Shown: piece after piece, positions 1 through 14,330 of the stretch
How the letters are laid out: each line of letters begins with the position of its first letter
Position numbering within the stretch: position 1 is the first letter of the stretch
Assembly (NCBI GenBank): GCA_024704765.1
Contig: JAKMXF010000111.1
Span: 1,499,627-1,563,626 of the forward strand
DNA length: 64,000 nucleotides
Source of the DNA: Oopsacas minuta
Lineage: Eukaryota > Animalia > Porifera
Direction of reading: 5' to 3'
Program-made: the position numbers and the translations under genes
Notes under the pieces: generated by a model
The model's input: the letters and a program-made list of their open reading frames with translations, nothing else
Databases searched by the model: none
What the model was told of the DNA's origin: nothing

Positions 1-134
1 GAGAAATGTGAAAACTTGTGGTGTTCAGAAACGAAAACATTATTAAGAGAGGAGAACGTGGATAGCTCTTGGAGAAGAAAGAATATTCAAATTGAATCGT
101 AAATCTGTAACAAAATTGTATTTACCATTCTGTA

Positions 135-842
135 TCAAATGGTATTAGAGCTTGAACCATTCACAGCTTCCTCTAACTCGGTTATCCAATGGCTGACTTG
201 TTCAGAGATTTTAATCTCAGAATTGACCTCTCTGCTGGTTGCTTGCCTAAAAGCACTCAGCTTAGTTTGCACGACATCGACAAGCTTCTCCACTCCCATG
301 CAGTGAGAGACTAGCTCCTCCTTGCTCATGGCATCTAGACGTGAAGCATGAGCATCTGTGAATGCAGATTCAAAATCGTGATCTAGATAATCAGGAGACG
401 GCTCATAGATAGGAATAGGTCCGTCAGCGGAGGAGTTACTCTCATTTCCGGAGTCCAGAGAGAAGATATTGACTGCGAGGAGGGAGGAAGGTGTATTCAT
501 GTGAGGCTGTTCGCTAGGCTTGTCATCCATCAAGAACTGAGTAGTATTATATGGAGCGACAGCCTTCCTCTTCCCCAGCTGTTGCACCTGTTGTAAGTGT
601 CGCTCAATCCGAAGATTCTCATACTCCTGAAACTCTTGCTTCTCTTCCCAAGTCATCTGGCTGTACGGTTTCCATTTGCGTATCTTCTGTCTACGCTTTC
701 TCTGTTTACGCTGCTTTCCACCAGAACTCTCTTCTCTGCGGATCTTGACACCAGTGACCTCTTTCTTGTCAGGTTCACTCAAGTTAGAAGAATCAGCCAC
801 CAACTCTGAAGGCCCTAATTCAGGCTTTTCATGAGTATCCAT
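135..842 (-). CDS. HEXIM1: HEXIM (P-TEFb inhibitor, 7SK snRNP component), intronless, 235 aa
   Basis: Basic region KQRKQRKRRQKIRKWKPYSQMTWEEK, followed by the APYNTTQFLM (PYNT) motif, an acidic region and a C-terminal coiled coil. Confidence 0.93.
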   Translation of the reverse strand: MDTHEKPELGPSELVADSSNLSEPDKKEVTGVKIRREESSGGKQRKQRKRRQKIRKWKPYSQMTWEEKQEFQEYENLRIERHLQQVQQLGKRKAVAPYNTTQFLMDDKPSEQPHMNTPSSLLAVNIFSLDSGNESNSSADGPIPIYEPSPDYLDHDFESAFTDAHASRLDAMSKEELVSHCMGVEKLVDVVQTKLSAFRQATSREVNSEIKISEQVSHWITELEEAVNGSSSNTI

Positions 843-1900
843 GTTGTATACTAATGCAATAACGCTATAATACAGATGCGTAGATCTAACAATGATAACG
901 AGAAAATCAGAATAATATTATCCACACCCGATTACAACTAACTAATGAATCAAATCTCTATACAGAACTAATATTTGGCAAATAATTTACAGATGATAAA
1001 TGGTTCAGGTATATGTATGTGCAATGGAAAAACTCGGAATGTTATCCGACACAGTTTCGCCTGACAAATGTTAAAATCTTGAGTGTGGCTACAAGGAGAT
1101 GCGATAATTATTTGGAGGTTGTCTGACATTGTACTTAAGTCCGTGGTAGTGAGAAACTGGCGGTCCGAGTCCGGCGAGTGGCGTAGCCAGCCTGGGCACA
1201 GTGTTGGCGCACGACACAAGTAGCATATTTGCGGCACAAGCGCCACCTTGACTACGTAACTGGGTCCGACTAATACGAATACTGGTACATTAATATATAC
1301 ACATTTGGGGGTGGGGATTTGCACCTGAGACTATCAATTTTCTCAAGGTACAATTTCCACACTTTTAATGATATAATTAAAAAATCAAGTTTTCACACCA
1401 TTAATTGCATTCGATGGAATATTCAAAACAAAGTTAGGCTAGGGAGATTGGGTTTCAACAACTTGTTAGAGAATTGGGAGGTGCGTAGAAGCTGATATTT
1501 TCAGAGAATGAAATTTAAAATACACGAAAATATATCATAAAACTTCGATCAAAATTTAGTTAATAATTTCGAAAGATTCTTCGAATATTAGGCATATTCG
1601 TTTTACCCATAATCAAGCCCGGGGGCACGGAAGTGTGCCGGTTAAATCATAGCAGTCATTCGAAAGTGATCCTATTGAAATCTCACCATATAAATAGTAC
1701 TAACAACAGTAAAGTGGCCCTGGGCCAATAAATCAATCATATTTCACGAGTGTGAAGTTGGCAGCGAATTCAAGGAATGAAATTTGAGCACAACTTAACA
1801 CTTAACTCGAATATTCGCTATCTCGAAAGGATTTTGACTTCCCGGGCGTTGACCGCATTTGCATTTATATATTGTTGCCATTATCCGTATTTTTCTATAG

Positions 1901-2485
1901 GAGCATTGGATGTACAGTTTTTGAGATGGCAACAGGGAAGCCACCTTGGTATTTACTTTTAAATGATTGTAATAGAATGGATTCTGTAATTATGCACATG
2001 AGAAGACCTCCCTTCCATCCATCACATATTTTAGCTTCAAGAGTGTTTGTAGGGCTTTTAAGGATATCCCACAAGAAGCAGCTCTATTCAGGATAGGAAT
2101 GGGATATGATCTACCAGAACTTCCTGATATATTATCAGATGGAGTGAAGGCAGTTATTAACAGAGGTTTGCAACAGTTAGTTGATAGTTTGGTTACAGTA
2201 ATGGTCACTTATTGTGAACCCCCGCGGGGCAAAAAATATTGTTCATGAATCAATTTTAAGAGAATGTTATTTCGGGAATGATAAGGGCTAGAAACTTGAA
2301 ATTTGGTGTCTATGCGGGATGTGATTAGTCTGGGAACACTTTCTAAGATATAAGCAATAGCTTATATTACACTCTTAATTTGTTTGTTCATCTGTATAAC
2401 TATTAATATTTCTTTTAGAGATCCATCCAATCGACCTAGTGCTAAACAGCTCCTACTCACCCAATTCTTAAGAGAATCATTTTAA
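1901..2485 (+). CDS. MAP3K19: MAP3K19/YSK4-like kinase, C-terminal exons only (1901-1948, 2053-2175, 2419-2485; subdomains IX-XI)
   Basis: Manual splicing at GT-AG sites gives (W)SIGCTVFEMATGKPPWAFKDIPQEAALFRIGMGYDLPELPDILSDGVKAVINRGLQQDPSNRPSAKQLLLTQFLRESF*. Phases match. No upstream kinase exon was found between 843 and 1900. Confidence 0.85.
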
Positions 2486-2837
2486 CCCCTGTGTATAATA
2501 TTTTAACAGTATATCTTCTAATGTGCGTGCTCGTTGTTATTCGCTTATAACTCGAATTGGATTCTATTTTATCTCAAATTATTAATAATATACTACTATT
2601 AAAGAAAAATGCAATAATCCCTCAGACTTAGTGCCCCATCGGATGACAGCAGGGAGTCCACCGGAGATATCCGAGCCCAGAGTTGGAATTGGGTTCAGGT
2701 TCGAAGTTGATCAGTTCGAACTTTGTGCGTAATTTTTTAAATTCAATGATTTAATATTATTTTTTGAAAGATTATATTTACATTAGAAACATCATATATG
2801 GAACTATAATGAAATGACCTCGAAAAGACATTTACGG

Positions 2838-2919
2838 CAGTGGTTCTCAACCTGGGATACACGGACACCATAAAATGAACTAAAGAGATCCGCGGGAGAA
2901 AAAAGGTTCAGAACCAATG
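2838..2919. mobile_element. 82-bp hAT (Charlie-type) miniature element
   Basis: TIR CAGTGGTTCTCAACC / GGTTCAGAACCAATG; perfect 8-bp TSD ATTTACGG (2830-2837 and 2920-2927). Confidence 0.8.
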
Positions 2920-3157
2920 ATTTACGGATAAATATTATTAACCTGTAATATTGCAAGAACAAATTTTCCTTTCTACACTTCGGGTTGGATCGGGTTCTGA
3001 AAAGTGGACCTGATTCCAACTCTATCCGAGCCTATACTTGTAAATGATAATCCATAGCGGTTGCAGACCTGAGGTCCACACGATCTCAAATTATATAGAC
3101 GTTGTGTCTTAGATAAATATACACGAGTGATAATTGAATTTAAGGACTTGATTAAGT

Positions 3158-3857
3158 TCACATACTATCACCACTAACACCTAGCTCAGCTCCAACCCTT
3201 TGTATCACTTCTAACACACCCATTTGTAGCTTAATACTCTCCTTTTGATTTGTAACACAAAAAGTAGGCACAGCGGCTTGTTCTAGGACTGATTGCTGTT
3301 CTTCTAGAAGTTTGTCTAATTCTCTAATTATTTCTTTGTCTTTTGCAGTCATTTCGTCTTGGCTCATCTTTTCTAATTTCTGTTTTGCTTCATCGTAATT
3401 CCGTCTTACAATTATTTCATGATGTTGTCTGCCATCTAGTTTACGTAACCCCTCTTTTAGCTGTTGGTTAAGTTCTGTTTGTTTCTTCTTGTGAGATGTA
3501 GCGACCTGATTGAATTATACAAGAGTAAACAGTTCTCAAATGGATGGCTCTTATAAGCGATACATGCACACACGTTGACACCATTCGGACGCGGGTTCAT
3601 ATTTTCACAATCCCCCAATTATCCACGCATCCGACGTGTATTACCTTCATTCTTTGTTGCAGGAGCTGCTCCTCTGTTAGTGACTGTATCTCTTCTAATT
3701 CTTTTATAATCTCAAATACAGTCCCGTCGAGTAACGAAGTAGCTAGTTGATAGAGACGCTCTTCCGTTAGATGAGAGCTAATCGGCTCACTAAGTTCTCC
3801 TTTTATTGAGTTTAGTGTCTTTAGGTATTGGTCTAGTTTGGGACTATTTTCTGTCAT
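3158..3857 (-). CDS. DGCR6: DGCR6/gonadal family protein, 2 exons (3857-3645, 3505-3158)
   Basis: LATSLLDGTVFEIIKELEEIQSLTE and ELDKLLEEQQSVLEQAAVPTFCVT match DGCR6 motifs (LLDGTVFEI, QQSTLEKAGV). Phase-0 GT-AG intron 3644-3506. Confidence 0.88.
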
Positions 3858-4159
3858 AACTAAATAGAGAATTTGTAAATAAGTTCTATGAAGGTATACG
3901 CATATGACAAGGGTCATATTAGGAAATAATCTGGTTATAAAATGACCAAAATACTGGAGAACAGGTCAAAACTGGTGTTCCGCCCCTACCAGGGGGTCTA
4001 TAAATGTGTGATAATTGGTATAGACTATCCATGGCTAAAAAGATTGAGAAATATTCATGAATTAAACATAATCTTAATTTAGCTAAGTTATGAATGAATT
4101 GAGACATTTATTACAAACCAATTATATCCTAAACTAGAAATTACATACTTTCTACATTC

Positions 4160-4339
4160 ATGGCTACTGCAACTGTTGCTATGGAAACGGGATCGCAAAT
4201 CCCAATCCCACAGACAGTTGGATTATCAGGTCAGATCCCAAACTCAGCTGGAGGGTATTCTTGGCCGATTAGCGATATTGGGAGACTGAGACATGAATAT
4301 TGTCATTATTTCACCATTTTATCAGTGAAATTCAAATAA
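4160..4339 (+). pseudogene. RO60: RO60/TROVE2 N-terminal fragment, truncated after about 44 codons
   Basis: MATATVAMETGSQIPIPQTVGLSGQIPNSAGGYSWPISDIGRLR resembles the Ro60 N-terminus ([23 protein letters not shown]). Similarity stops at about 4291 with no splice donor, and the frame runs into TAA at 4337-4339. Confidence 0.72.
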
Positions 4340-5749
4340 ACAATATATTTACTAACTAACGAGGGAATAGTAGTAACAGACCTCCTTTAACACGCTTAAC
4401 TACACATATTTACAAGTAGAATCATTGAAATATTTTCCATGAATTGGACACTTTGTATTATGATGACGTCATAACATAATGAGATATGAAATGCCATCAG
4501 ATAGACATCATGTTGAGCTGAAAAAATTTTCTCATTAACAAATGCATTTTAACAGCGATAATGACCTCCACCAAAAGGACAAGCTTCGTATCAATCGTTT
4601 GGACATGTGGCAGGTTCGGATTATCAAGGTTGTGTATTGAATCAATTTTCATATAAACTATCAAATATCTGTGGAGTCCGCCTATTAGCGAATCGTACAG
4701 TAAACTTCTGTTACAAGCAAGCAGCTATAGTTTGAAAAGAATATATTCCACTCCGCTTACAACCAAATGAAATCATGCACGCGGTGGGTACTTCGTTATA
4801 ACTAGAGTTTATTGCAGAGGTTCACAACCTAGGGGTCAAGGACAGCCTGGTGGTGCACGGATGACAGCAGGGGATTCACGAGTGAGCGAACACCACTGAA
4901 ATACTGATTAATCATGTGAAAATACCTGAAATATTCGAGTGTGAAGATTCACTATCTGGTATTTCTTTTGAAGCCATTTGATTCAAATAATAGCTAACAA
5001 AATGTATTAGAATTACTCAAATTCAAAATATCAGAAAAAATCGACAAATTAGAAAATACTTTCGATGTCATTAGTTAGACCGAGAGGTGATTTTAATAAT
5101 ATTCGAATGAATTATTTCACACCTAATTTGAGTGTTCATATTTTTGCTAGATAATATAACTACAGGGGACTATATTGGACTCAATAAGTATCAATCCTTG
5201 GTCAGATTGGGAAATGACTCTCAAACCATGAATTAATGAAATTCATCAAATTTGTATTCACGTAAATCGCTAAATTTTGTGATAATTCTATAACAGAGAT
5301 CCTCTGTTCCCTTTACACAACAAATTGTTATTGGAAACTGTGAAATCGGGAATTTAATTACAAACAAATATGTAAACAACAACAATATAATTAATAAATA
5401 TTTATTACACTATCAATAATACTAGCACAAATAATATCAAAGTTATTATTAACAACTATCCCTGTTGGATAATCACATGTAATTTTGTGTATCAGCTGTC
5501 CATCTTTAGTAAATATATTAATTGAATTTCCCCAATAATCGCTAATTATAATATTATTACACAAATCTAAACACATAAAATTTCTTCTCTTCCATTTTCT
5601 AATATTATGAAACTTTTCAATAAATCACCTGATTTAGAGAATATGTGTATATTATTAATCTTATTAATGTCTGCTACAAATATCTTATTATTATTTATTT
5701 TGACGTCACGCGGATTTATAAGTTTGTCTTTTCGTATTTCTCTTATATA

Positions 5750-8700
5750 TGTTATAGGAGATGTTGGCGATCTGATGGTATATGGCTTCAATACAGTTTT
5801 TAAGTGAATTGTGTGACTTCAACAAATTATAGCTGACATGCTTCAATCGTCGTACGATCGTACGATAGCACAATTCCACAAATAAATAGTAAACCTAAAA
5901 TGTTTTTATTTATTCATACTTAAAATGACTGAAAATTACCATCGAAAGTAAGATTACCACACTCTTATGTAAAATATGCAAGCGTCAAAATGAAATTATA
6001 CAATTAATAGGAGATTTTATCCAATTGTCTCCATTACTAATTTTAAAACTCCGGCACTTTAAGTTCCTTGGGTATACACTTCTTTTCGGTAATCATTTTA
6101 CCTTAAAAACTGTTATTGAAAAAAATCATTACCATTACGGTGGAATGAAAACAAGAAAATAATATCTGATGAAGATTCAAATCTACCACGAAACATGAAA
6201 GTCAATTTTGCAGTATACTTGGCTATTCCTTGTTAGTTGACCTCAAACACAAGCATTGAGGGAGTTTAGTACGTACCATTCCTAAATAAGTACATTAGAT
6301 ATATCGTAATATACTTGGCTAAATTATCAGTTTGCTTACTGATGGTATTAGAAACTATAAAAGTATACTGTATTGAAGCCATATACCAGGGGTGCCCAAC
6401 ATACGGCCCGCACAAAATTTGCACTTTGTAATATATACTATTTCTTCATGAACAATTCCTAAGCCACATTTCGATAGCATTCATACTGGGTGTCGAATTT
6501 CAATGTATTTGACATTTTGAGGATTCTTATTCATTTTCAATACACGACAGGTGCATGTGTTTAGTAATAATAATCCTTAGCGGTGTATAAATATAAACTA
6601 GTATAATTCTAAGCTTACAATTGAAATTCAGATACTGCGTTTACTCATCTCCTAAATTACCTGTAGAATATATATATCATTTATATTAACGGAGCCTTGT
6701 TCTAAGAAAAGGAAAGTTGATATCGAGAGTAGAACTTTCAACGACAGCTGGACCGAGAAATACTTTTTCACCAACTTGCTTAATATGCAAGCAGGTCATC
6801 GCAGTGATGAAAGAGTACAACATCCAAAGACACTATAGTGCTAAACATCAAGATTACAAAGCATGCTCAGGGCAGATACGGAAGGATAGAGTACAATCAT
6901 TAATAAGGAACTTTCGGTACAGCAAAATATTTTTACAAATACTAATTCTGAGTCAGAAAAAGCTGTTCGTGCAAGCTTTGCCATTTCCAAACTTATTGCA
7001 AAGAAATATAAGCCATTTACTGATGGTGAATTTATCAAGGAGTGTGTTATTACTTTGGCGCAAATTATGTGCCCAGAGAAACAGAAGTTATTTGAAAACA
7101 TTAGCCTTTCAAGAATGACAATTAGCCGTAGGATAGAGAACTTATCAACAGACTTAAAACTTACTTTAGAAAAACGTGCGAGTGAGTTCCAGTACTATTC
7201 TCTGGCCCTTGATGAGAGCACAGATGCCACTGATACTGCCCAACTTGCTGTTTTTGTAAGAAGAATCGATTCAAAGTTTAATCTTACAGAAGAATTGGCG
7301 AACTTACACAGCCTTCACGATAAAACAACTGGAGTTGATATTTATAAAGCGGTGATGAATGGAATTGATGCTATCGGACTTAAGTTGAATAATTTATGTG
7401 GGGTAACGACAGATGGCACACCATCAATGATTGGGAAGGAAAGGGGCTTCGTTGCTCTTCTGGAGAAAGAAAGGATCAATTCAGGAAGTAGTACTATGAA
7501 ATTAGTCAAAGTGCATTGTATAATTCACCAGGAAAATCTCTGTTAAAAGTCATTAAGAATGCAGGGTGTAATGGAAATAGTAGTGAAAACTGTCAACTTC
7601 ATTCGTGCTCGAGGACTCAATCATCGACAATTTCGAAAACTTTTAGACGAAATGGATTCTCAATATGGAGACCTTCTTTATTATACGGAAGTACGATGGT
7701 TAAGTAGGGGTGCGATGCTTCGACGCTTTTATGAACTCAAAGAAGAAGTATTTCATTTTATGGAGGAGAAGGGGAAACCAGTTTTTCATCTAATGATCCA
7801 TTATGGTTGTGTGACTTGGCATTTTTGGTCGATATCACTCAATATTTGAATAACCTCAACTCAAAATTACAAGGAAAAATCTGCTTATTCACAATTTGTT
7901 TGACTTCATTTGCGCTTTTGAAAGAAAGCTCGAGATATGGGAAAAACAATTAATAGAAGGAAATCTTTATCACTTTGAAACCTTATCAAAACATTCCCCT
8001 CCAGATACAGGTGTATACGCAATCGAAATCAATTCCCTGCGCAAAGAATTCGAGAATAGATTTAAAGATCTTCGTAGCAATATTGTAAACTTCGCTATAT
8101 TCTCAAATCCTTTCTCTTTAGAACCTATTGAACTCCCCGAGCATCTCCAGCTAGAATTGGTCGACATGCAATGCAACCAGGACTTGAAAGCAAAATTCAA
8201 TGATGTCACACTGATAGACTTTTATCAAAAGTATTTATCATCATCAGATTACCCCAATCTTATCAAGCATTGTAAGATGATGGCTTGTCTATTTGGGAGC
8301 ACATACATATGTGAACAACTGTTCTCCCAAATGAAGCTAGTAAAAAGCAAATGCAGAACTGTTTTAACTGATAGACATCTCGAAGATACATTAAGAATAG
8401 CTACTACGGATATGGAACAAAACATCGACCATATAGTCAGACCTATGCGTCATCAATCGTCATCCATGTCAAAGTAGTAAATCATTGCCTGTACTGGTAT
8501 TAGCGGTGGTAAAATGAGTATTCGGGTTTCTAATTAGTTAGTATTTTTGATCATTTTCTGTAGTCTGCCAATATTTCATATGTGTGTTCCCTTTCTGTAG
8601 CATTTCCACTTGGATATTCCAACAAATTTTCTCTAAATAAATCTGAAAATTATAAATTGGTCCATGTGGCCCACCAAACTATTGAGGAAGCCAATGTGGC

Positions 8701-8765
8701 CCGCAATTAAATCGAGTTGGGCACCCCTGCCATATACTATCAAATCGCCCACATCTCCTATAACA
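5750..8765. mobile_element. Non-autonomous TIR element with TGT...ACA ends and 4-bp TSD (Ginger-like), about 670 bp without the nested hAT
   Basis: About 48-bp TIR TGTTATAGGAGATGT(T/G)GGCGAT(C/T)TGAT(G/A)GTATATGGCTTCAATACAGT; TSD TATA at 5746-5749 and 8766-8769. The TSD length is ambiguous because the target is an (AT)n run. Confidence 0.75.
6387..8729 (+). mobile_element. hAT Charlie/SPIN-type (GTF2IRD2-like) transposon with frameshifted transposase (about 6700-8477)
   Basis: 14-bp TIR CAGGGGTGCCCAAC; perfect 8-bp TSD CCATATAC (6379-6386, 8730-8737). Motifs include CLIC..HY BED-like finger, LALDESTD, TTDGTPSM, HCIIHQE, EVRWLS and FGSTYICEQLFS, spread over 5 broken ORFs. Confidence 0.95.
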
Positions 8766-10005
8766 TATATTCTAAATCAGGGCTGAATGCTGCAATTCTA
8801 TTATTATTACAATCTGCAACTAACAATTCTCCATTTGTGTCAGTTGTTAGACCAAGAGGGTCACTAACAACTCCCTTAACACTCTTAATTAATTTGTAAT
8901 TTGTTCTAGAGAATTTCAATACAGCATTAAGTACAAAATCACTTATAAACACCCATTCCTTATTTAATGCTATACCGTATGGAGTATTTAGCTGCCCTTT
9001 ACCAAATTCATGAATGAACTTACCCTCTGTAGAGAAGATCTGTATTCTTTTATTGTTTGTATCTGCTATATAGATTATATCTCCATCTAGAGCTAGTCCG
9101 TAAGGGCGATTCAGCTCTCCTTTCTTATTGCCAGGTTTACCAATCCTTCTGATCGGATTAGTCTTGTTTTTGTAGACTTGTTGTTCAGCTGTATTCTGAA
9201 TAGACCCCAACTTCTCCAGCTGTCCTAGGAGAGAGTCCAGACGCTCAGTATTGAAAAAAGGAAATGGGACAAGCGTTTCTTTTTCGTATTTCAGCTCTTG
9301 TTTGCAACATCTGTTCTTCTTGAAACTTTACTATTTCACTCTGTTGAATAGAAGTCTCATTGAATTGTCTGATCATCTTCTCCAGGTCTGCTACTTGTGT
9401 CTTTCTTGTATTCTCCTTTCTTAGATAGTCCTGCTTCATATCGAACAGCTGGAGAAGCAGCTGATCTCGCCTCTCTGTCGCAATCCGAATAATCTTCCCG
9501 AACGTGGAATGGATCAGTTGTTCCGCTTGTTCGAAAGAGTTCATAGGAATTTCTTGTGCGTATTTGGTGGCCATTTGTTTGTTGTTCTGTTTATGATTAG
9601 TCTCATTTACAGACTGTATTTATACAAGTTCACACATTAAGTATTCAGGTGTCAAGTGATGAAATAGAAAGTTACAACTAATCACATTTCTTTGAACTCT
9701 ACCACGAGACTATTGTCACATAGAATACAGATGTGTTAGGTCAGATGACTTTCCACATGTAAATTAGTTCCAGCTATACCACACACATTCCTTATAGAAT
9801 TAGTTGCTATGCTCTATTAGCTATCAGTTTCAATTTGTGATTCTAATCATTTCTTGTATATTCTTCCTTGAAATTTGGCGCGAAAATATGAAAATATAGA
9901 GTTTATATAATTTCATAGGAAATTATCAAAGGTGTCAAAATATGATTAATCATAATAGATGCAATAATCTTTAGGGAATTGTTGTATGTAATATTTCTAT
10001 TTTAG

Positions 10006-10408
10006 CAATACGAACTCGTCAAAGCAGAAGTTGATGTTCTTAAGAGACTTTCTCATGGAAATATAGTCAAATATCTCGGCTCGTGTCTTGACAACACGAT
10101 AGTGAATATATTCATTGAGTTTGTAGCTGGAGGATCTGTAGCTCGACTGCTTAAAACGTAAGAAAATTAGAAATACAATTATATATTTATCTATTACAGT
10201 AGGCACCAGTTAATCAGGTCAAAATGGTCTGGTCCAGATATAACCCTAATTAATCTGAGTCTACTGTTCTAAAATAGAATAGTCCTATAGATAATTGAAT
10301 TAATTATGTAATTAGATACGGACCATTGGAAGAATCTTTTCTAAGGAATTACAATCGTCAAATTGTTAGCGGAGTTAAGTACTTACATTCAAAGAATGTA
10401 ATACACAG
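10006..10408 (+). CDS. MAP3K19: MAP3K19/YSK4-like kinase, middle exons only (10006-10157, 10316-10408; subdomains III-VIb)
   Basis: Spliced product [82 protein letters not shown], with canonical TTTAG/GTAAG sites and matching phases. Confidence 0.87.
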
Positions 10409-11281
10409 GTAAGTACATACGTATACAAGAACATCTTTAATACGAACAGCAACGAACGGTAGAAATGCTCCCCTATACGATGAAAACTAATCAACTATTA
10501 ACCAAAGTAGCATATAAAACTGAGTGTGCACCACACTCCTAATCTTCGAAGACTAAAATATTGGTCAATATGTCGAAAAACTACTTTACAAATCATCGAC
10601 AACACTATTGATAACTATATATGATCTTAGAAACTTCTCTCAACAAAGGGCTCGTTAAACGCTAATCCATGACATGATCCCCAAAAGAATATTGCGCAGT
10701 CATGAAAAATAACATATACGGGCATTCTCAGGATTGAGTCATCATCGCAAGAGATATCGTATCGAATTATATCAGGGTATGGGATATCGGGCATATATAC
10801 ATGTTCTCAGGGGACGATTTGACCATAACATTAAAGGTTGCCAAGTTATTGATGAATATCAGCAAAAATGTGGCATCCATGGATGAAACTATTACTCTGG
10901 AACGTGCAAACATAATCAAATCAAATTTTGATAATTTGCATGAAAATAGCCTTAGATCCTATTGAATAAATACGAGTTAACTGTCCATGCAGTTTAGAAG
11001 TCCATGATTAGGTATATGTAGATAAAAAAGTGTAGATGTAATAAATCATGCAATGGAGCAAAACTAAAATATGAAAGTCAATCTAAATGTTCTATCTTTG
11101 AAGCAAAGTTCTATACTTCAAGTGAACGAAATAATAACTAAGCCTGGAAGGAGTAAGGGCTAGTGGCGTAGATTAAAAGGATTTGGTAAGTGTGTAGCAA
11201 TGGAGCTTGGAGTATATAAATAAGTAATCTGGGACAGAAATTCAAATATATATACCTACATAATTACAGCTCAATACAATT

Positions 11282-11902
11282 CTATGAGAGTAGAGAGTAT
11301 GATCTATGTGTAAACTTTCGCGAAATATCCATGCTATGCAAGATAAATGATATTATTTTACTGCAGCTATATCCAATCCAAGTTCCAGCCAAACAAGGGA
11401 TAGGCCATTTCTGCCAGGGCTTATCCCAATCTAAGAGGATAGGAAAAGCACTCATCCACACACATACACAAACAGAATATACTTGTACTACTAAATCTAA
11501 CTCTTCTAAAGAGTATAGCTCTAAAAGCAATAGCTTAGAGATAAAATATCTGTAGTTTATTCTGAATGAGAAAGTACAAGGTAATACTGTGAGGATAGAA
11601 ACAGTAAACGATAAAACAAGAGTTTCAGTCTTATTCTCGAATAGAGCAGCACCAAATGCAATGAATATACAGTGAATAGGAATAATAGCGAGTAGAGTCA
11701 CGATGAGAGAATGTATATATCTCCTTACAACTATAGCACGACTGGCTGATGAATTGTTACGAAAGTAGACTAGAGATTTGATAAATAAATAGGAGAGAGA
11801 TATAATGCAGGAACTTGTGAGAATTCGAGAGTATGTTGTGAAGTAGTACGCCAGGAGGGAGATTGTTATCATAGGAAAAACCTCAGTCAATAACAGGTCC
11901 AT
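11282..11902 (-). CDS. PIGF: GPI biosynthesis protein PIG-F
   Basis: Multi-TM 206-aa protein with IAFGAALFE and LLDWDKPWQKWPIPCLAG, the typical PIG-F C-terminal motif. Confidence 0.88.
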   Translation of the reverse strand: MDLLLTEVFPMITISLLAYYFTTYSRILTSSCIISLSYLFIKSLVYFRNNSSASRAIVVRRYIHSLIVTLLAIIPIHCIFIAFGAALFENKTETLVLSFTVSILTVLPCTFSFRINYRYFISKLLLLELYSLEELDLVVQVYSVCVCVWMSAFPILLDWDKPWQKWPIPCLAGTWIGYSCSKIISFILHSMDISRKFTHRSYSLLS

Positions 11903-12319
11903 ACAAATATAATACTATCAATAAACTCGTAAGCCATTGGTAAGCAATGCTCCAAAACATATCAAAAATAATATTACTTAATACGATTACTTATAAATCT
12001 GTAAATTGAATAGACTGAAATATATACTATGCAGCTAGATAGTTATTAACTATATTAAAATGTAAACACGTAAACATCGTATGGTACAACGTATATGACC
12101 ATTGTACGAGTACTTCCCTGTATGTGTTTAGGATCCATATGATAGTTCAAATAAGTATTTGACATATTCGGTGATATAAGTATTGAGTAAGTAATCTAAA
12201 ATACAAATAGCGAAAAACATATGATGTGAATAATAAATTATAAATATTAAGAGAAGTGTACTAATAAAGAGGTTGTAGAGGTTATAAGCGATTCTGATTG
12301 CGATAAAAATATAAAATGA

Positions 12320-12832
12320 TTAATGTTGGATACGCTCCTTCTTCAGGTCAGCACCAGAAAATGAATAAGGCAGCAATTCGGTAATAGTAGCAATCTTGTA
12401 CTGTTTGTCAGGTCGTACAATTATAACGTAATATTCTCCAAACTCTAAGATGAACTGTCTACAGGCACCACAGGGAGCAGCGAAGCTATCCACCATATCC
12501 GTGTTGACAGCAATCGCACGGAACTCTCTGTATCCATCACTCACAGCTTTCACATAAGCACATACTTCAGCACACACACACAGCCCATAGCTAGCGTTCT
12601 CTACATTACATCCTCTGTATATCATCCCATCGTTCGTAAGCAGAGAAGCTCCAACTCTAAACTTGCTATAGGGTGAGTAAGAGTTAGATTTAGCTTCGAT
12701 GCATGCCTCAATTAACTCAGGGAGTGCCTTTTCTACGTCAGGAGGTAATTGTATCTCTTTATTAGGTAGCAGGAGGTGTTGATGTGTAGTCGGAACTTTG
12801 ACATCACTGGGGTCATTAGAAGGGATCGACAT
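12320..12832 (-). CDS. CDA: Homotetrameric cytidine deaminase
   Basis: SYSPYSKFRVGA, GCNVENASYGLCVCAE and PCGACRQ zinc-binding motifs. Confidence 0.95.
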   Translation of the reverse strand: MSIPSNDPSDVKVPTTHQHLLLPNKEIQLPPDVEKALPELIEACIEAKSNSYSPYSKFRVGASLLTNDGMIYRGCNVENASYGLCVCAEVCAYVKAVSDGYREFRAIAVNTDMVDSFAAPCGACRQFILEFGEYYVIIVRPDKQYKIATITELLPYSFSGADLKKERIQH

Positions 12833-13400
12833 CAAAGTTACTATAATTTATAAATTAAAAGTATAGTTATAATTATTGTTAGGAATAGTGGAGTCTTACT
12901 CGCACGGACATTCCGTCTTAACATAAAGATTTTCAATATTCGTATTAAAATTAATGCTGTGGTAGGATGATCAAACGAGATTAGTAAGGAAACAGTGCAT
13001 CTACGTTTCAAATAATTGACGAAGGAATGTGTTTGATAAGATTCACTACAACATCCATTATATACCACAAATAATTTCGCTTGCTCACGCTCTGCGGCTT
13101 GGGAACACAGTGTTCGCATGTAACTCTGCTCTTCGTGCCTCGAATTTTATTTACACACGAGTACCTTCAAAGTGCGAAATTCAGAATCAGTGTACTCGAT
13201 TACCCCGAACAACCGTTGAAACCAAGTTTCTAAGTCAGTAAGACTTATTAGAAATTTGTTTAATTTATCTACTAATATTTCTCAAAATACGTAAAACTAC
13301 AAAAAAATATAAATACAAAAATATTATCCAAAATATCATAGCCTATGAAAATGTATAAATTTGTATTCATTATACAACTTACACAAGTATCTCTGTGCAA

Positions 13401-14330
13401 CTATAAGCATGCGGGTGTGGGTAGATCGAATACGATGGGAGGCTGTGAAGGAACACATTTAAGTGTACAGGTAGAAGCATTTATAAATACAGTATTCCCA
13501 TCAGTTGTCTGACCATACCCTTCGTGTATGTGCCCAAATACATGTACTTTAGGTTTAACCCTATTCTGTATAGTAGAGAGTAGCTCTACACAGCCAGCTC
13601 TACCGCCATGATTACACAGATCACCGTGTCCAATTGGAGGTCCATGAGTAATCAGAATATCTACATTATCAGGTATCTTATTCCATTTGTCAAGGAGAGG
13701 CTGACCTCGTTTAAGGTTGAACCCCCAGCTGAAAAACTCTGGTTGCCATGGAGACCCATAAATCTTAAATCCTAACAATTCACATCCAAAATCTTCCAAG
13801 TAGAGACCATTAGAAATGAGAGATTTCATTTCGTTTGAATCTAGCTTAGTTTTATGTGAGAATCTCATCCAAAGTGTTTTAGGATATTCTTCAGTATCTA
13901 GAGATAGGTCGTGATTACCAGCTATCACAACTTTGTATCTGTGTGGAAGAGAACCGAGAAAAGAATTGAATTTAACAACATCTTCTTTATGTCCTATGTT
14001 AGAGAAGTCTCCTGCATGTATCAGTACATCTCCTGATGGCACTTTCAATTTATCCGTATGGGAATGAGTGTCTGATATACACACGAAACGGGTGTAACCA
14101 TCACGAGGTGGGCATAAAGGATCTTTAATCTTCATAACTTCTACCTTCTGTTTCGGTTCCTTTTGTATTTGCAGCCAAGCTTCATCTGGTTTTCCTGTTA
14201 ACTTATTTAGTTTAATCTCAGACGACCCTACTCGTGGAGGAATGATAGTAACATCTTTTGGTACAACTATTTGATAGGGCAGAGATTTGATGAATTCCTG
14301 TGAACCAGCTGCACTACATTTTGCTGCCAT
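13401..14330 (-). CDS. MPPED2: Metallophosphoesterase domain-containing protein (MPPED1/2-like)
   Basis: FVCISDTH, HAGDFSN, IAGNHD, THGPP and FGHIHEG calcineurin-like phosphoesterase motifs; intronless. Confidence 0.92.
   Translation of the reverse strand: MAAKCSAAGSQEFIKSLPYQIVVPKDVTIIPPRVGSSEIKLNKLTGKPDEAWLQIQKEPKQKVEVMKIKDPLCPPRDGYTRFVCISDTHSHTDKLKVPSGDVLIHAGDFSNIGHKEDVVKFNSFLGSLPHRYKVVIAGNHDLSLDTEEYPKTLWMRFSHKTKLDSNEMKSLISNGLYLEDFGCELLGFKIYGSPWQPEFFSWGFNLKRGQPLLDKWNKIPDNVDILITHGPPIGHGDLCNHGGRAGCVELLSTIQNRVKPKVHVFGHIHEGYGQTTDGNTVFINASTCTLKCVPSQPPIVFDLPTPACL

What the first reader, a model, noticed from the sequence alone, without database searches (positions are those of the whole stretch)
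1901..10408. MAP3K19 exons in permuted order with a truncated RO60 at the internal junction: circular-DNA re-integration or a trans-spliced scrambled gene
Seen: exons for kinase subdomains IX-XI (1901-2485) lie about 8 kb UPSTREAM of exons for subdomains III-VIb (10006-10408) on the same strand. Both sets are MAP3K19/YSK4-like, do not overlap in the protein, have open frames and keep intact GT-AG sites. I found no exons for subdomains I-II or VII-VIII anywhere in the 64 kb. Between them lie DGCR6, an RO60 gene cut after about 44 codons with no splice donor (about 4291), and an NHL pseudogene. Inference: one event explains both oddities. A donor segment [MAP3K intron..NHL..exons III-VI..(VII-VIII)..exons IX-XI..DGCR6..RO60 5' end] circularises, which creates the RO60 break as the circle junction. 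It then reopens between the kinase exon groups and inserts between HEXIM and PIGF. Such circularly permuted duplications are known in cattle (KIT), tilapia and yeast. Alternatives: exon-scrambled gene assembled by trans-splicing, two unrelated nested paralog fragments, or misassembly.
Basis: partly seen in the sequence, partly recalled or inferred. Interest (0 to 1): 0.85.

Follow-up and report, generated by a model that had tools for sequence, protein, structure and literature searches.

The report
Relocated, circularly permuted kinase gene wreck
In the glass sponge Oopsacas minuta a roughly 8-10 kb piece of an old kinase-DGCR6-RO60 gene cluster now sits between two unrelated genes with its two ends swapped, which split the kinase gene into two out-of-order remnants and left only DGCR6 looking intact.

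Summary
Exons IX-XI of a MAP3K19-like kinase (1901-2485) lie 8 kb upstream of exons III-VIa (10006-10408) on the same strand. All splice sites and reading frames are intact. Exons I-II and VIb-VIII are absent from the 64 kb window and from 9.9 kb to its left.

The genome is Oopsacas minuta. Two other glass sponges have PIGF directly next to HEXIM, 1.1-1.9 kb apart, so the block between about 1844 and 10424-11281 is lineage-specific. Three relatives carry a complete, normally ordered kinase gene beside DGCR6 and RO60. An NHL gene is nested in RO60 intron 1 in two of them. The window block is that cluster in circularly permuted order: IX-XI, DGCR6, RO60 exon 1, NHL, then III-VIa.

- The joint of the two donor ends lies at about 9835-9978, not at the RO60 break.
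- RO60 exon 1 is cut at 4291, where a high-copy repeat begins.
- The block looks single-copy, so it was moved or its donor was lost, not simply duplicated.

A circular intermediate fits the order but is not proven. A two-fragment rejoining fits almost as well. The kinase, RO60 and NHL pieces are most likely dead relics, and DGCR6 is the surviving passenger.

The parts
135..842 (-). HEXIM, the left ancestral flank gene
   Evidence: Pfam HEXIM, E=1.5e-26. Collinear with the HEXIM genes of relatives L004 and L005.
843..1843 (.). Ancestral HEXIM upstream spacer. It ends in a copy of a high-copy repeat (1746-1843) that is truncated at 1843.
   Evidence: A 50-nt element at 1562-1611 is conserved upstream of HEXIM in L005. 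The repeat is present at high depth in all four runs, and other copies continue beyond 1843. An X1 contig spans 1-1921 with 0 differences.
1844..2491 (+). Segment A: remnant of kinase intron VIII plus exons IX (1901-1948), X (2053-2175) and XI (2419-2485, stop codon)
   Evidence: Aligns with L011 8841-9549, L009 1681-2795 and L018 13161-12684 at 73-81% nucleotide identity. Splice sites are intact.
2497..3072 (.). Dispersed high-copy repeat filling the spacer between the kinase 3' end and the DGCR6 3' end
   Evidence: Summed contig depth reaches 9578, against about 300 for unique sequence, with many partial contigs.
3150..3917 (-). Segment B: DGCR6 main coding exons (3158-3507 and 3642-3857/3917). 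It is single-copy and apparently intact.
   Evidence: Pfam DGCR6 on both exons. The public model is 204 aa. It aligns with the relatives' DGCR6. Depth is about 240-370, close to the flank's 305.
4160..4291 (+). RO60 exon 1, truncated. The last ~22 codons and the splice donor are missing. It lies head-to-head with DGCR6, as in relative R5.
   Evidence: Matches PDB 1yvp RO60 residues 14-38, E=0.016. The alignment with relatives' exon 1 stops at about 4290. No other RO60 exon is in the window.
4292..5184 (.). High-copy repeat whose left edge is exactly at the RO60 break
   Evidence: 14 X1 contigs and 5 X5 contigs have loose ends just before 4292/4291. Depth reaches 12700.
5360..9834 (-). NHL-repeat pseudogene (coding parts 5360-5743 and 8790-9607) with its upstream region to 9834. 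It is the orthologue of the NHL gene nested in RO60 intron 1 of relatives R1 and R2. Together with 4145-5359 it forms segment C.
   Evidence: blastn to L009 12029-12413 and 12440-13528. Pfam NHL. Frame breaks.
5745..8770 (+). Degenerate hAT-type transposon inserted in the NHL gene
   Evidence: 42-nt terminal inverted repeats. Pfam zf-C2H2_12, DUF4371 and Dimer_Tnp_hAT on four broken ORFs. The relatives' NHL is uninterrupted at this point.
9835..9978 (.). Joint of the two donor ends: the end of RO60 intron 1 meets kinase intron II
   Evidence: Homology to relatives' RO60 intron 1/NHL upstream region ends at 9834, which corresponds to L009 13528, immediately before the first + strand ORF after the nested NHL gene (L009 13527-13940; it has no Pfam hit, and I take it to be the next RO60 exon). 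Homology to the kinase resumes at 9979-10000.
9979..10424 (+). Segment D: kinase exons III-V (10006-10157) and VIa (10316-10408) with flanking intron ends
   Evidence: Pfam Pkinase. 80% nucleotide identity to L011 7732-7893 and L009 346-506. 86% amino-acid identity to P0001.
10425..11281 (.). Spacer of unknown origin between segment D and PIGF. It contains the right insertion boundary.
   Evidence: No homology to relatives and no Pfam hit. This stretch was not covered by the reads call.
11282..11902 (-). PIGF, the right ancestral flank gene
   Evidence: Pfam PIG-F, E=4e-30. Collinear with L004 and L005, where it lies 1.9 kb and 1.1 kb from HEXIM.

Best explanation
In the Oopsacas minuta lineage a contiguous ancestral segment left its original cluster and now lies in the PIGF-HEXIM spacer. 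The segment ran from kinase intron II, through exons III-XI, DGCR6 on the opposite strand and RO60 exon 1, to the end of RO60 intron 1 with its nested NHL gene. That span is about 5.7-5.8 kb in relative R2 (L011 about 7711 to 13431 or beyond).

In O. minuta its two parts are swapped but keep their orientation: [IX-XI, DGCR6, RO60 exon 1, NHL] comes first and [III-VIa] second. Exons VIb-VIII were lost at the opening point, and exons I-II and the rest of RO60 were left behind.

The simplest single mechanism is excision or copying as a DNA circle. This would join the RO60-intron end to the kinase-intron-II end at about 9835-9978. The circle would then be linearised inside the kinase gene and inserted by end-joining.

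The consequences are structural rather than functional. The MAP3K19-like kinase is destroyed. RO60 exon 1 is orphaned and was later clipped where a repeat now begins. The NHL gene decayed through a hAT insertion and frameshifts. DGCR6, which is single-copy, survives as the functional passenger.

Shown here: the insertion, the permutation, the homology map, single-copy depth for 1-5740, and the broken genes. Inferred: the circle, the order of events, and that the kinase pieces have no function.
For: - Identity of the genome: contig JAKMXF010000111.1 of GCA_024704765.1. JAKMXF01 is the O. minuta WGS project.
- Ancestral adjacency of the flanks: Metallophos-CDA-PIGF-HEXIM-transketolase is collinear in L004 and L005. 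PIGF and HEXIM are only 1.9 and 1.1 kb apart there, with no kinase, DGCR6 or NHL hit between them.
- Ancestral cluster: a complete, compact, normally ordered kinase gene sits next to DGCR6 and RO60 in R1 (L008/L009), R2 (L011) and R5 (L017/L018).
- Segment map: window 1872-2491, 3150-3857, 4150-9834 and 9979-10424 correspond to the donor order D-(VIb-VIII)-A-B-C, seen in the window as A-B-C-D.
- No extra inversion is needed. DGCR6 is head-to-head with RO60 in R5 just as in the window, and the kinase distances give the split R1+R2 | O+R5.
- The HEXIM-to-exon-IX junction is confirmed by a 4380-nt contig with 0 differences.
- Depth over A, B and the start of C is about 240-370, against 305 for the flank. 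There is therefore no second copy at 80% identity or more.
- The missing exons are absent from 74 kb.
- The introns inside the segments are retained, so the event was at DNA level.
- The same reversal of block order is the published signature of circular intermediates (PMC7450558; the cattle KIT Cs29 case is cited in PMC3784456 and PMC12235870).
Against: - The order alone cannot distinguish a circle from two fragments rejoined at random. That outcome is one of four possible order-and-orientation classes.
- Breakpoint microhomology could not be examined, because no sufficiently close un-rearranged sequence was available.
- Published circle-mediated cases are duplicative. Here the block is single-copy, so the donor must have been excised or lost afterwards.
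- The right half (5741-11400), including the joint of the donor ends and the PIGF-side boundary, rests on the assembly alone. That assembly is a hybrid SPAdes/SSPACE build.
- The kinase exons show no decay. All splice sites are intact. Nonsynonymous divergence on the O. minuta branch is not elevated: the O/(R1+R2) ratio is 1.84, against 1.25-2.0 for HEXIM, PIGF and CDA. Four of the five listed exonic polymorphisms are synonymous. A recent event would explain this, but so would retained function.
- The original site in O. minuta could not be inspected.
Confidence: 0.62

Rival explanations
1. Multi-break reshuffling without a circle. Several simultaneous double-strand breaks, or a few successive cut-and-paste or inversion events, freed fragments [IX-XI..NHL] and [III-VIa]. 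These were re-ligated in swapped order into a break between PIGF and HEXIM, and exons VIb-VIII were lost.
For: Only two fragments need to be swapped, since A-B-C stay contiguous as in relatives. The block is single-copy, as expected for cut-and-paste. The DGCR6 neighbourhood differs among five relatives, so it is prone to rearrangement. Repeats sit at several boundaries.
Against: It needs the same number of breaks but gives no reason why both fragments kept their orientation and cyclic order. No other foreign fragment was recognised in the block, although the 10425-11281 spacer is unidentified.
Confidence: 0.25
2. Assembly artefact. The unique segments between dispersed repeats were mis-ordered by the hybrid assembler, and the real locus is differently arranged.
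For: The assembly was made with SPAdes, PacBio reads and SSPACE. High-copy repeats separate the segments. Other first-stage notes report wrong-order kinase exons elsewhere in this assembly. The right half was not checked with reads.
Against: The HEXIM-to-exon-IX junction is present in an independently built contig with 0 differences, so the kinase gene is truly broken there. There are no Ns. A misassembly would not recreate the ancestral adjacencies A-B, B-C and exon 1-NHL seen in relatives. Exons VIb-VIII are absent rather than misplaced.
Confidence: 0.06
3. The pieces still function. Either they belong to a scrambled gene whose exon groups are transcribed separately and joined in trans, with the missing exons at the old locus, or exons IX-XI encode a new small protein.
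For: All frames and splice sites are intact. Nonsynonymous change shows no excess. Four of the five listed exonic variants are synonymous. Glass sponges use spliced-leader trans-splicing (first-stage note).
Against: The public annotation, which drew on RNA-seq data, calls no gene on these exons. The G-loop/lysine exons and the catalytic-loop/DFG/APE exons are absent from 74 kb. Spliced-leader trans-splicing only adds a 5' leader. The neighbouring NHL and RO60 pieces in the same block are visibly decaying. The variant list is truncated and tiny.
Confidence: 0.04
4. Two separate genes or paralogue fragments. Each would continue outside the examined region, with the other genes nested in their introns.
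For: Nested genes are very common in glass sponge genomes.
Against: There are no partner exons in 53 kb downstream of exon VIa or 11.7 kb upstream of exon IX. The relatives' gene has introns of about 60-700 nt. Both groups map to one compact gene in three relatives. The flanks are ancestrally adjacent.
Confidence: 0.02

Closest known systems
Circular-intermediate translocations: cattle KIT colour-sidedness alleles Cs29/Cs6, and human 'circular' segmental duplication pairs (Chicote et al. 2020, PMC7450558)
   Same: A contiguous donor segment reappears at an unrelated site with its two parts in swapped order and unchanged orientation. The two original ends are joined internally. Breakpoints lie in non-coding DNA.
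   Different: Those cases are duplications with the donor retained, and they span tens to hundreds of kb. Here the block derives from only about 6 kb of ancestral sequence, is single-copy, lost an internal piece at the opening point, and destroyed a gene. Breakpoint microhomology could not be examined.
MAP3K19 (YSK4) family of STE-group protein kinases
   Same: The best named relatives of the exons are MAP3K19. The kinase domain ends at the protein's C-terminus. Relatives of O. minuta have a complete gene.
   Different: The O. minuta copy lacks the exons for subdomains I-II and VIb-VIII, and its remaining exons are out of order. It cannot encode a kinase domain from this locus.
Unprocessed (DNA-level) pseudogene fragments created by genome rearrangement
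   Same: Introns are retained, there is no poly(A) or retro-copy signature, and the flanking genes are unrelated.
   Different: The two fragments are complementary parts of one gene, in permuted order, and still free of disabling mutations.

Membership tests
MAP3K19/YSK4-like kinase | Closest named homologues are MAP3K19 | tested here: met
   Exon III-V is 57% identical to the P0013 and P0011 clusters, which are named MAP3K19 in a caecilian and a coral.
MAP3K19/YSK4-like kinase | Complete catalytic domain: G-loop, VAIK lysine, HRD/catalytic loop, DFG and APE | tested here: not met
   Only subdomains III-VIa and IX-XI are present. The exons for I-II and VIb-VIII are absent from 74 kb.
MAP3K19/YSK4-like kinase | Kinase domain at the extreme C-terminus | tested here: met
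   The stop codon comes 21 codons into exon XI, as in relatives.
Circular-intermediate translocation | Donor order X-Y appears as Y-X at the acceptor site with the same orientation | tested here: met
   The donor order is D-(VIb-VIII)-A-B-C in three relatives. The window has A-B-C-D, all co-oriented with R5.
Circular-intermediate translocation | An internal joint connects the two outer ends of the donor segment | tested here: met
   The end of RO60 intron 1 (to 9834) abuts kinase intron II (from 9979).
Circular-intermediate translocation | Acceptor site unrelated to the donor and intact in relatives | tested here: met
   PIGF and HEXIM are adjacent in L004 and L005, and the cluster is on other contigs.
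Circular-intermediate translocation | Only microhomology or short indels at breakpoints | not testable with these tools
   Introns and spacers are saturated between O. minuta and the available relatives. The sequence of the ~92%-identical organism (run X5) cannot be retrieved.
Circular-intermediate translocation | Donor copy retained (duplicative) | tested here: not met
   Contig depth over exons IX-XI and DGCR6 equals the single-copy flank, and no second version at 80% identity or more was laid.
RO60/TROVE gene | TROVE and vWA domains present | tested here: not met
   Only a truncated exon 1 is present. The relatives' TROVE and vWA exons find nothing in the window or its left flank.
hAT transposon | Terminal inverted repeats plus a transposase with the hAT dimerisation domain | tested here: met
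   42-nt inverted repeats. Dimer_Tnp_hAT, DUF4371 and a zinc finger on broken ORFs. An 8-bp target duplication was not clear.
Processed retrocopy | Introns removed | tested here: not met
   The introns between IX/X/XI and between III-V/VIa are retained.

The most novel reading that the evidence does not exclude
The two kinase exon groups, and perhaps exons left at the old locus, are still used. They would be transcribed separately and joined in trans, or exons IX-XI would encode a new C-lobe mini-protein. This would explain why every splice site and frame is intact and why the listed variants are mostly synonymous, even though the neighbouring NHL and RO60 pieces decay.
Probability: 0.04. Interest if true: 0.9.

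Novelty: new member of a known kind. Interest (0 to 1): 0.45.

Why it matters
This is a clean case in an early-branching animal, backed by comparison with three related genomes. A small gene cluster was relocated in circularly permuted order. The move killed a conserved MAP3K19-like kinase and carried an essential-looking neighbour, DGCR6, to a new address.

It gives a concrete mechanism for one of the gene losses for which O. minuta is known. It shows that the signature linked to circular intermediates in mammals also occurs at kilobase scale in a compact sponge genome. It also flags that DGCR6, RO60 and the kinase need re-annotation in this assembly.

It does not change any general principle.

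Tried and rejected
- **Partner exons outside the finding.** tblastn with MAP3K19 queries found none in the window or in 9.9 kb to the left. blastn and tblastx with the relatives' own exon DNA also found none.
- **DGCR6 inversion specific to O. minuta.** I first inferred this from R1 and R2. I dropped it after R5 showed the same head-to-head DGCR6/RO60 orientation as the window.
- **RO60 break as a rearrangement joint.** Rejected. RO60 exon 1 followed by NHL is ancestral, and a repeat family starts exactly at 4292.
- **Relaxed selection on the kinase exons.** A three-taxon dN test gave no signal. dS is saturated.
- **Locating the O. minuta RO60 locus.** The gene downstream of RO60 in relatives returned no O. 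minuta protein. Two sequence look-ups in the scan's notes were blank.
- **Known RNA or tRNA in the conserved high-copy element at 1746-1843.** None found.
- **Inverted repeats flanking the block, or other copies of its repeats in the window.** None found.
- **Relative R4 contigs (L012, L015, L016).** Too short or differently arranged to help.
Full report
**What is there.** The window is the reverse complement of part of contig JAKMXF010000111.1 of assembly GCA_024704765.1. JAKMXF01 is the Oopsacas minuta whole-genome project.

Reading the sequence and aligning it with relatives gives these kinase exons on the + strand:
- IX: 1901-1948
- X: 2053-2175
- XI: 2419-2485, ending in a stop codon
- III-V: 10006-10157
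- VIa: 10316-10408

Every exon has an AG acceptor and a GT donor in the same phase as in relatives. Pfam Pkinase matches both exons of the downstream pair. A search of 1.8 billion representative proteins with exon III-V gave, apart from one 88-aa fragment, named full-length hits that are MAP3K19, at 57% identity.

The public annotation calls no gene on these exons.

The genes between the two groups are:
- DGCR6 on the - strand.
- An ORF starting at 4160 whose residues 24-48 match RO60 residues 14-38.
- An NHL-repeat gene on the - strand. It is split by a degenerate hAT element with 42-nt terminal inverted repeats at 5745-8770 and carries at least two further frame breaks.

**The missing exons are really missing.** tblastn with MAP3K19 proteins found only the four known places in the window. 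It found nothing in the 9.9 kb left of the window, which holds transketolase with a nested gene and the start of KTI12. The exon I-II and VIb-VIII DNA of the sponge relatives also found nothing in those 74 kb. The window has no N.

**The flanks were neighbours.** HEXIM orthologues on long contigs of two other glass sponges (R1 = ERZ25072730, L004; R2 = ERZ25072740, L005) sit in the order ABC transporter, Metallophos, CDA, PIGF, HEXIM, transketolase. The order Metallophos, CDA, PIGF, HEXIM is collinear with the window. PIGF and HEXIM are 1.9 and 1.1 kb apart there, and that gap has no kinase, DGCR6 or NHL similarity. In O. minuta the two genes are 10.4 kb apart. A 50-nt element upstream of HEXIM is conserved with R2 at window 1562-1611. 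The left boundary of the foreign block therefore lies between 1611 and 1872.

**Where the block came from.** DGCR6 orthologues lead to a conserved cluster on other contigs.
- In R2 (L011) a complete, compact kinase gene has exons I, II, III-V, VIa, VIb-VII, VIII, IX, X and XI in normal order within 2.4 kb. It is followed by DGCR6, RO60 exon 1, an NHL gene on the opposite strand nested in RO60 intron 1, and the rest of RO60.
- R1 (L008/L009) is the same with a few extra genes between the kinase and DGCR6.
- R5 (ERZ25069837, L017/L018) has kinase, an NHL paralogue, DGCR6 on the opposite strand head-to-head with RO60, and then a complete RO60.

Nucleotide alignments map the window onto this cluster as follows:
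- A = window 1872-2491, kinase exons IX-XI
- B = window 3150-3857, DGCR6
- C = window 4150-9834, RO60 exon 1, NHL and its upstream region. The hAT element and another repeat are extra insertions.
- D = window 9979-10424, kinase exons III-VIa

In relatives the order is D, (VIb-VIII), A, B, C. In the window it is A, B, C, D. All four segments have the same relative orientation as in R5.

Kinase protein distances are R1-R2 12, R1/R2-R5 23, O-R1 24, O-R2 32 and O-R5 30 differences out of 159 residues. These give the unrooted split R1+R2 | O+R5. The opposite DGCR6 orientation in R1 and R2 is thus one inversion on the internal branch, and nothing extra is needed in O. minuta.

The block is therefore a pure circular permutation of one ancestral segment that ran from kinase intron II to the end of RO60 intron 1. 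That span is about 5.7-5.8 kb in R2. Exons VIb-VIII were lost at the opening point.

**The RO60 break.** In relatives exon 1 continues for about 22 more codons to a GT donor. In O. minuta the similarity stops at about 4290. Laying run contigs on the window shows that 4292 is the left edge of a dispersed high-copy repeat: 14 contigs of the O. minuta-like run have unrelated sequence before it. However, it is a repeat insertion or an associated deletion inside segment C, not the joint of the donor ends. That joint lies at about 9835-9978. Homology there ends at the position matching L009 13528, immediately before the first + strand ORF after the nested NHL gene (L009 13527-13940). That ORF has no Pfam hit, and I take it to be the next RO60 exon. 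No other RO60 exon is in the window. An unchecked first-stage note places a RO60 gene with introns on another contig.

**Read-level support and copy number.** I laid window 1-5740 only, keeping within the operators' 6,000-letter limit.
- A 4380-nt contig of run X1 covers 1-1921 without a single difference. HEXIM's upstream region, the truncated repeat and the first 21 nt of exon IX are therefore truly contiguous.
- Summed contig depth is about 300 over exons IX-XI, about 240-370 over DGCR6, and 305 over HEXIM. No second version at 80% identity or more was laid. The block is thus single-copy in this organism.
- Run X5, from an organism about 92% identical, has contigs for HEXIM to 1432, for exon IX, for DGCR6 and for RO60 exon 1. 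The exon IX contig stops matching left of 1848. The RO60 contig stops matching left of 4013 and continues unlike the window beyond 4291. This hints that the close relative lacks the rearrangement. I could not read those contigs, so it is only a hint.

**State of the pieces.** The kinase exons show no stop, frameshift or lost splice site. A three-taxon comparison puts the nonsynonymous divergence on the O. minuta branch at 1.84 times that of R1+R2. This is within the range of the functional neighbours HEXIM, PIGF and CDA (1.25-2.0). Synonymous sites are saturated. The break is therefore recent relative to the deep split from R1 and R2, or the exons are still constrained.

Of the five exonic differences between X1 and the assembly that the tool listed, four are synonymous. 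The list is truncated and the number is too small to carry weight, so I record it as unexplained. In contrast, the NHL gene and RO60 exon 1 in the same block are visibly broken.

**Mechanism.** Introns are retained, so this was a DNA-level event. A circle formed from the donor segment, linearised within the kinase gene and inserted between PIGF and HEXIM, explains the order, the orientation and the internal joint in one step. The same block reversal is the published signature of circular intermediates in cattle and human.

Three things argue for caution:
- Only two fragments need to be swapped, which random rejoining would produce one time in four.
- Published cases are duplications, whereas this block is single-copy.
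- The breakpoints could not be compared with an un-rearranged close relative.

I put about 0.6 on the relocation-in-permuted-order account with a circle as the simplest route, and about 0.25 on multi-break rejoining without a circle. Misassembly of the unverified right half, retained function and independent fragments each get a few per cent.

The observation and the main inference are borne out: one event, an insertion between HEXIM and PIGF, and a circular permutation. The donor layout, the position of the joint, the cause of the RO60 truncation and the assumption of a duplication are not.

**Novelty.** This is a further, small-scale and gene-destroying example of a known kind of rearrangement, in a phylum where none seems to have been described. 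It adds a mechanistic case to the known gene loss in this species.

Noticed in passing
window 1746-1843: A ~100-nt element is present at very high depth in all four runs laid, which come from four differently labelled organisms. Other copies continue with a conserved sequence beyond 1843, so this copy is truncated exactly at the left edge of the relocated block. There is no Rfam or tRNA match.
   Followed up: partly
window 3158-4977 (L001 5866-7685): The public DGCR6 model (204 aa) reaches to 4977. It runs across the RO60 exon 1 remnant and a high-copy repeat. In relatives DGCR6 consists of two main coding exons that match 3150-3857, so the extra 5' exon of the model looks doubtful.
   Followed up: no
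window 1958-2498: Run X1 differs from the assembly at 2056, 2062, 2069, 2434 and 2479 inside kinase exons. Four of the five changes are synonymous, and the fifth restores the residue seen in relatives. Over 1922-2122 no contig with the assembly's own letters was laid.
   Followed up: partly
L009 12063-13235; L011 12110-13261: In two relatives an intact NHL-repeat gene is nested on the opposite strand inside RO60 intron 1. This is a conserved nested-gene pair that relative R5 lacks.
   Followed up: partly
L006 10001-10702 and 15266-15967: In a more distant relative (ERZ20067936) HEXIM is present twice, as an inverted pair flanking a PhyH gene. The neighbours also differ there: actin and the ABC transporter.
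   Followed up: no
L002/L003 (ERZ26869290 ctg247377): This 4-kb contig consists of about four alternating-orientation copies of the same kinase gene stretch, 92-99% alike. It looks like a fold-back or chimeric long-read artefact rather than real structure.
   Followed up: partly
window 2070-2433, run X6: A 635-nt contig of a distant organism joins exon X to exon XI with the intron skipped. This run may be RNA, in which case the kinase would be expressed and spliced in that species.
   Followed up: no
L001 14579-15778 (3.7-4.9 kb left of the window): An intronless ORF (320-399 aa, with a signal-peptide-like start and no Pfam hit) is nested on the opposite strand inside the transketolase gene. 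A similar unannotated ORF lies at the same place in relative L005.
   Followed up: no
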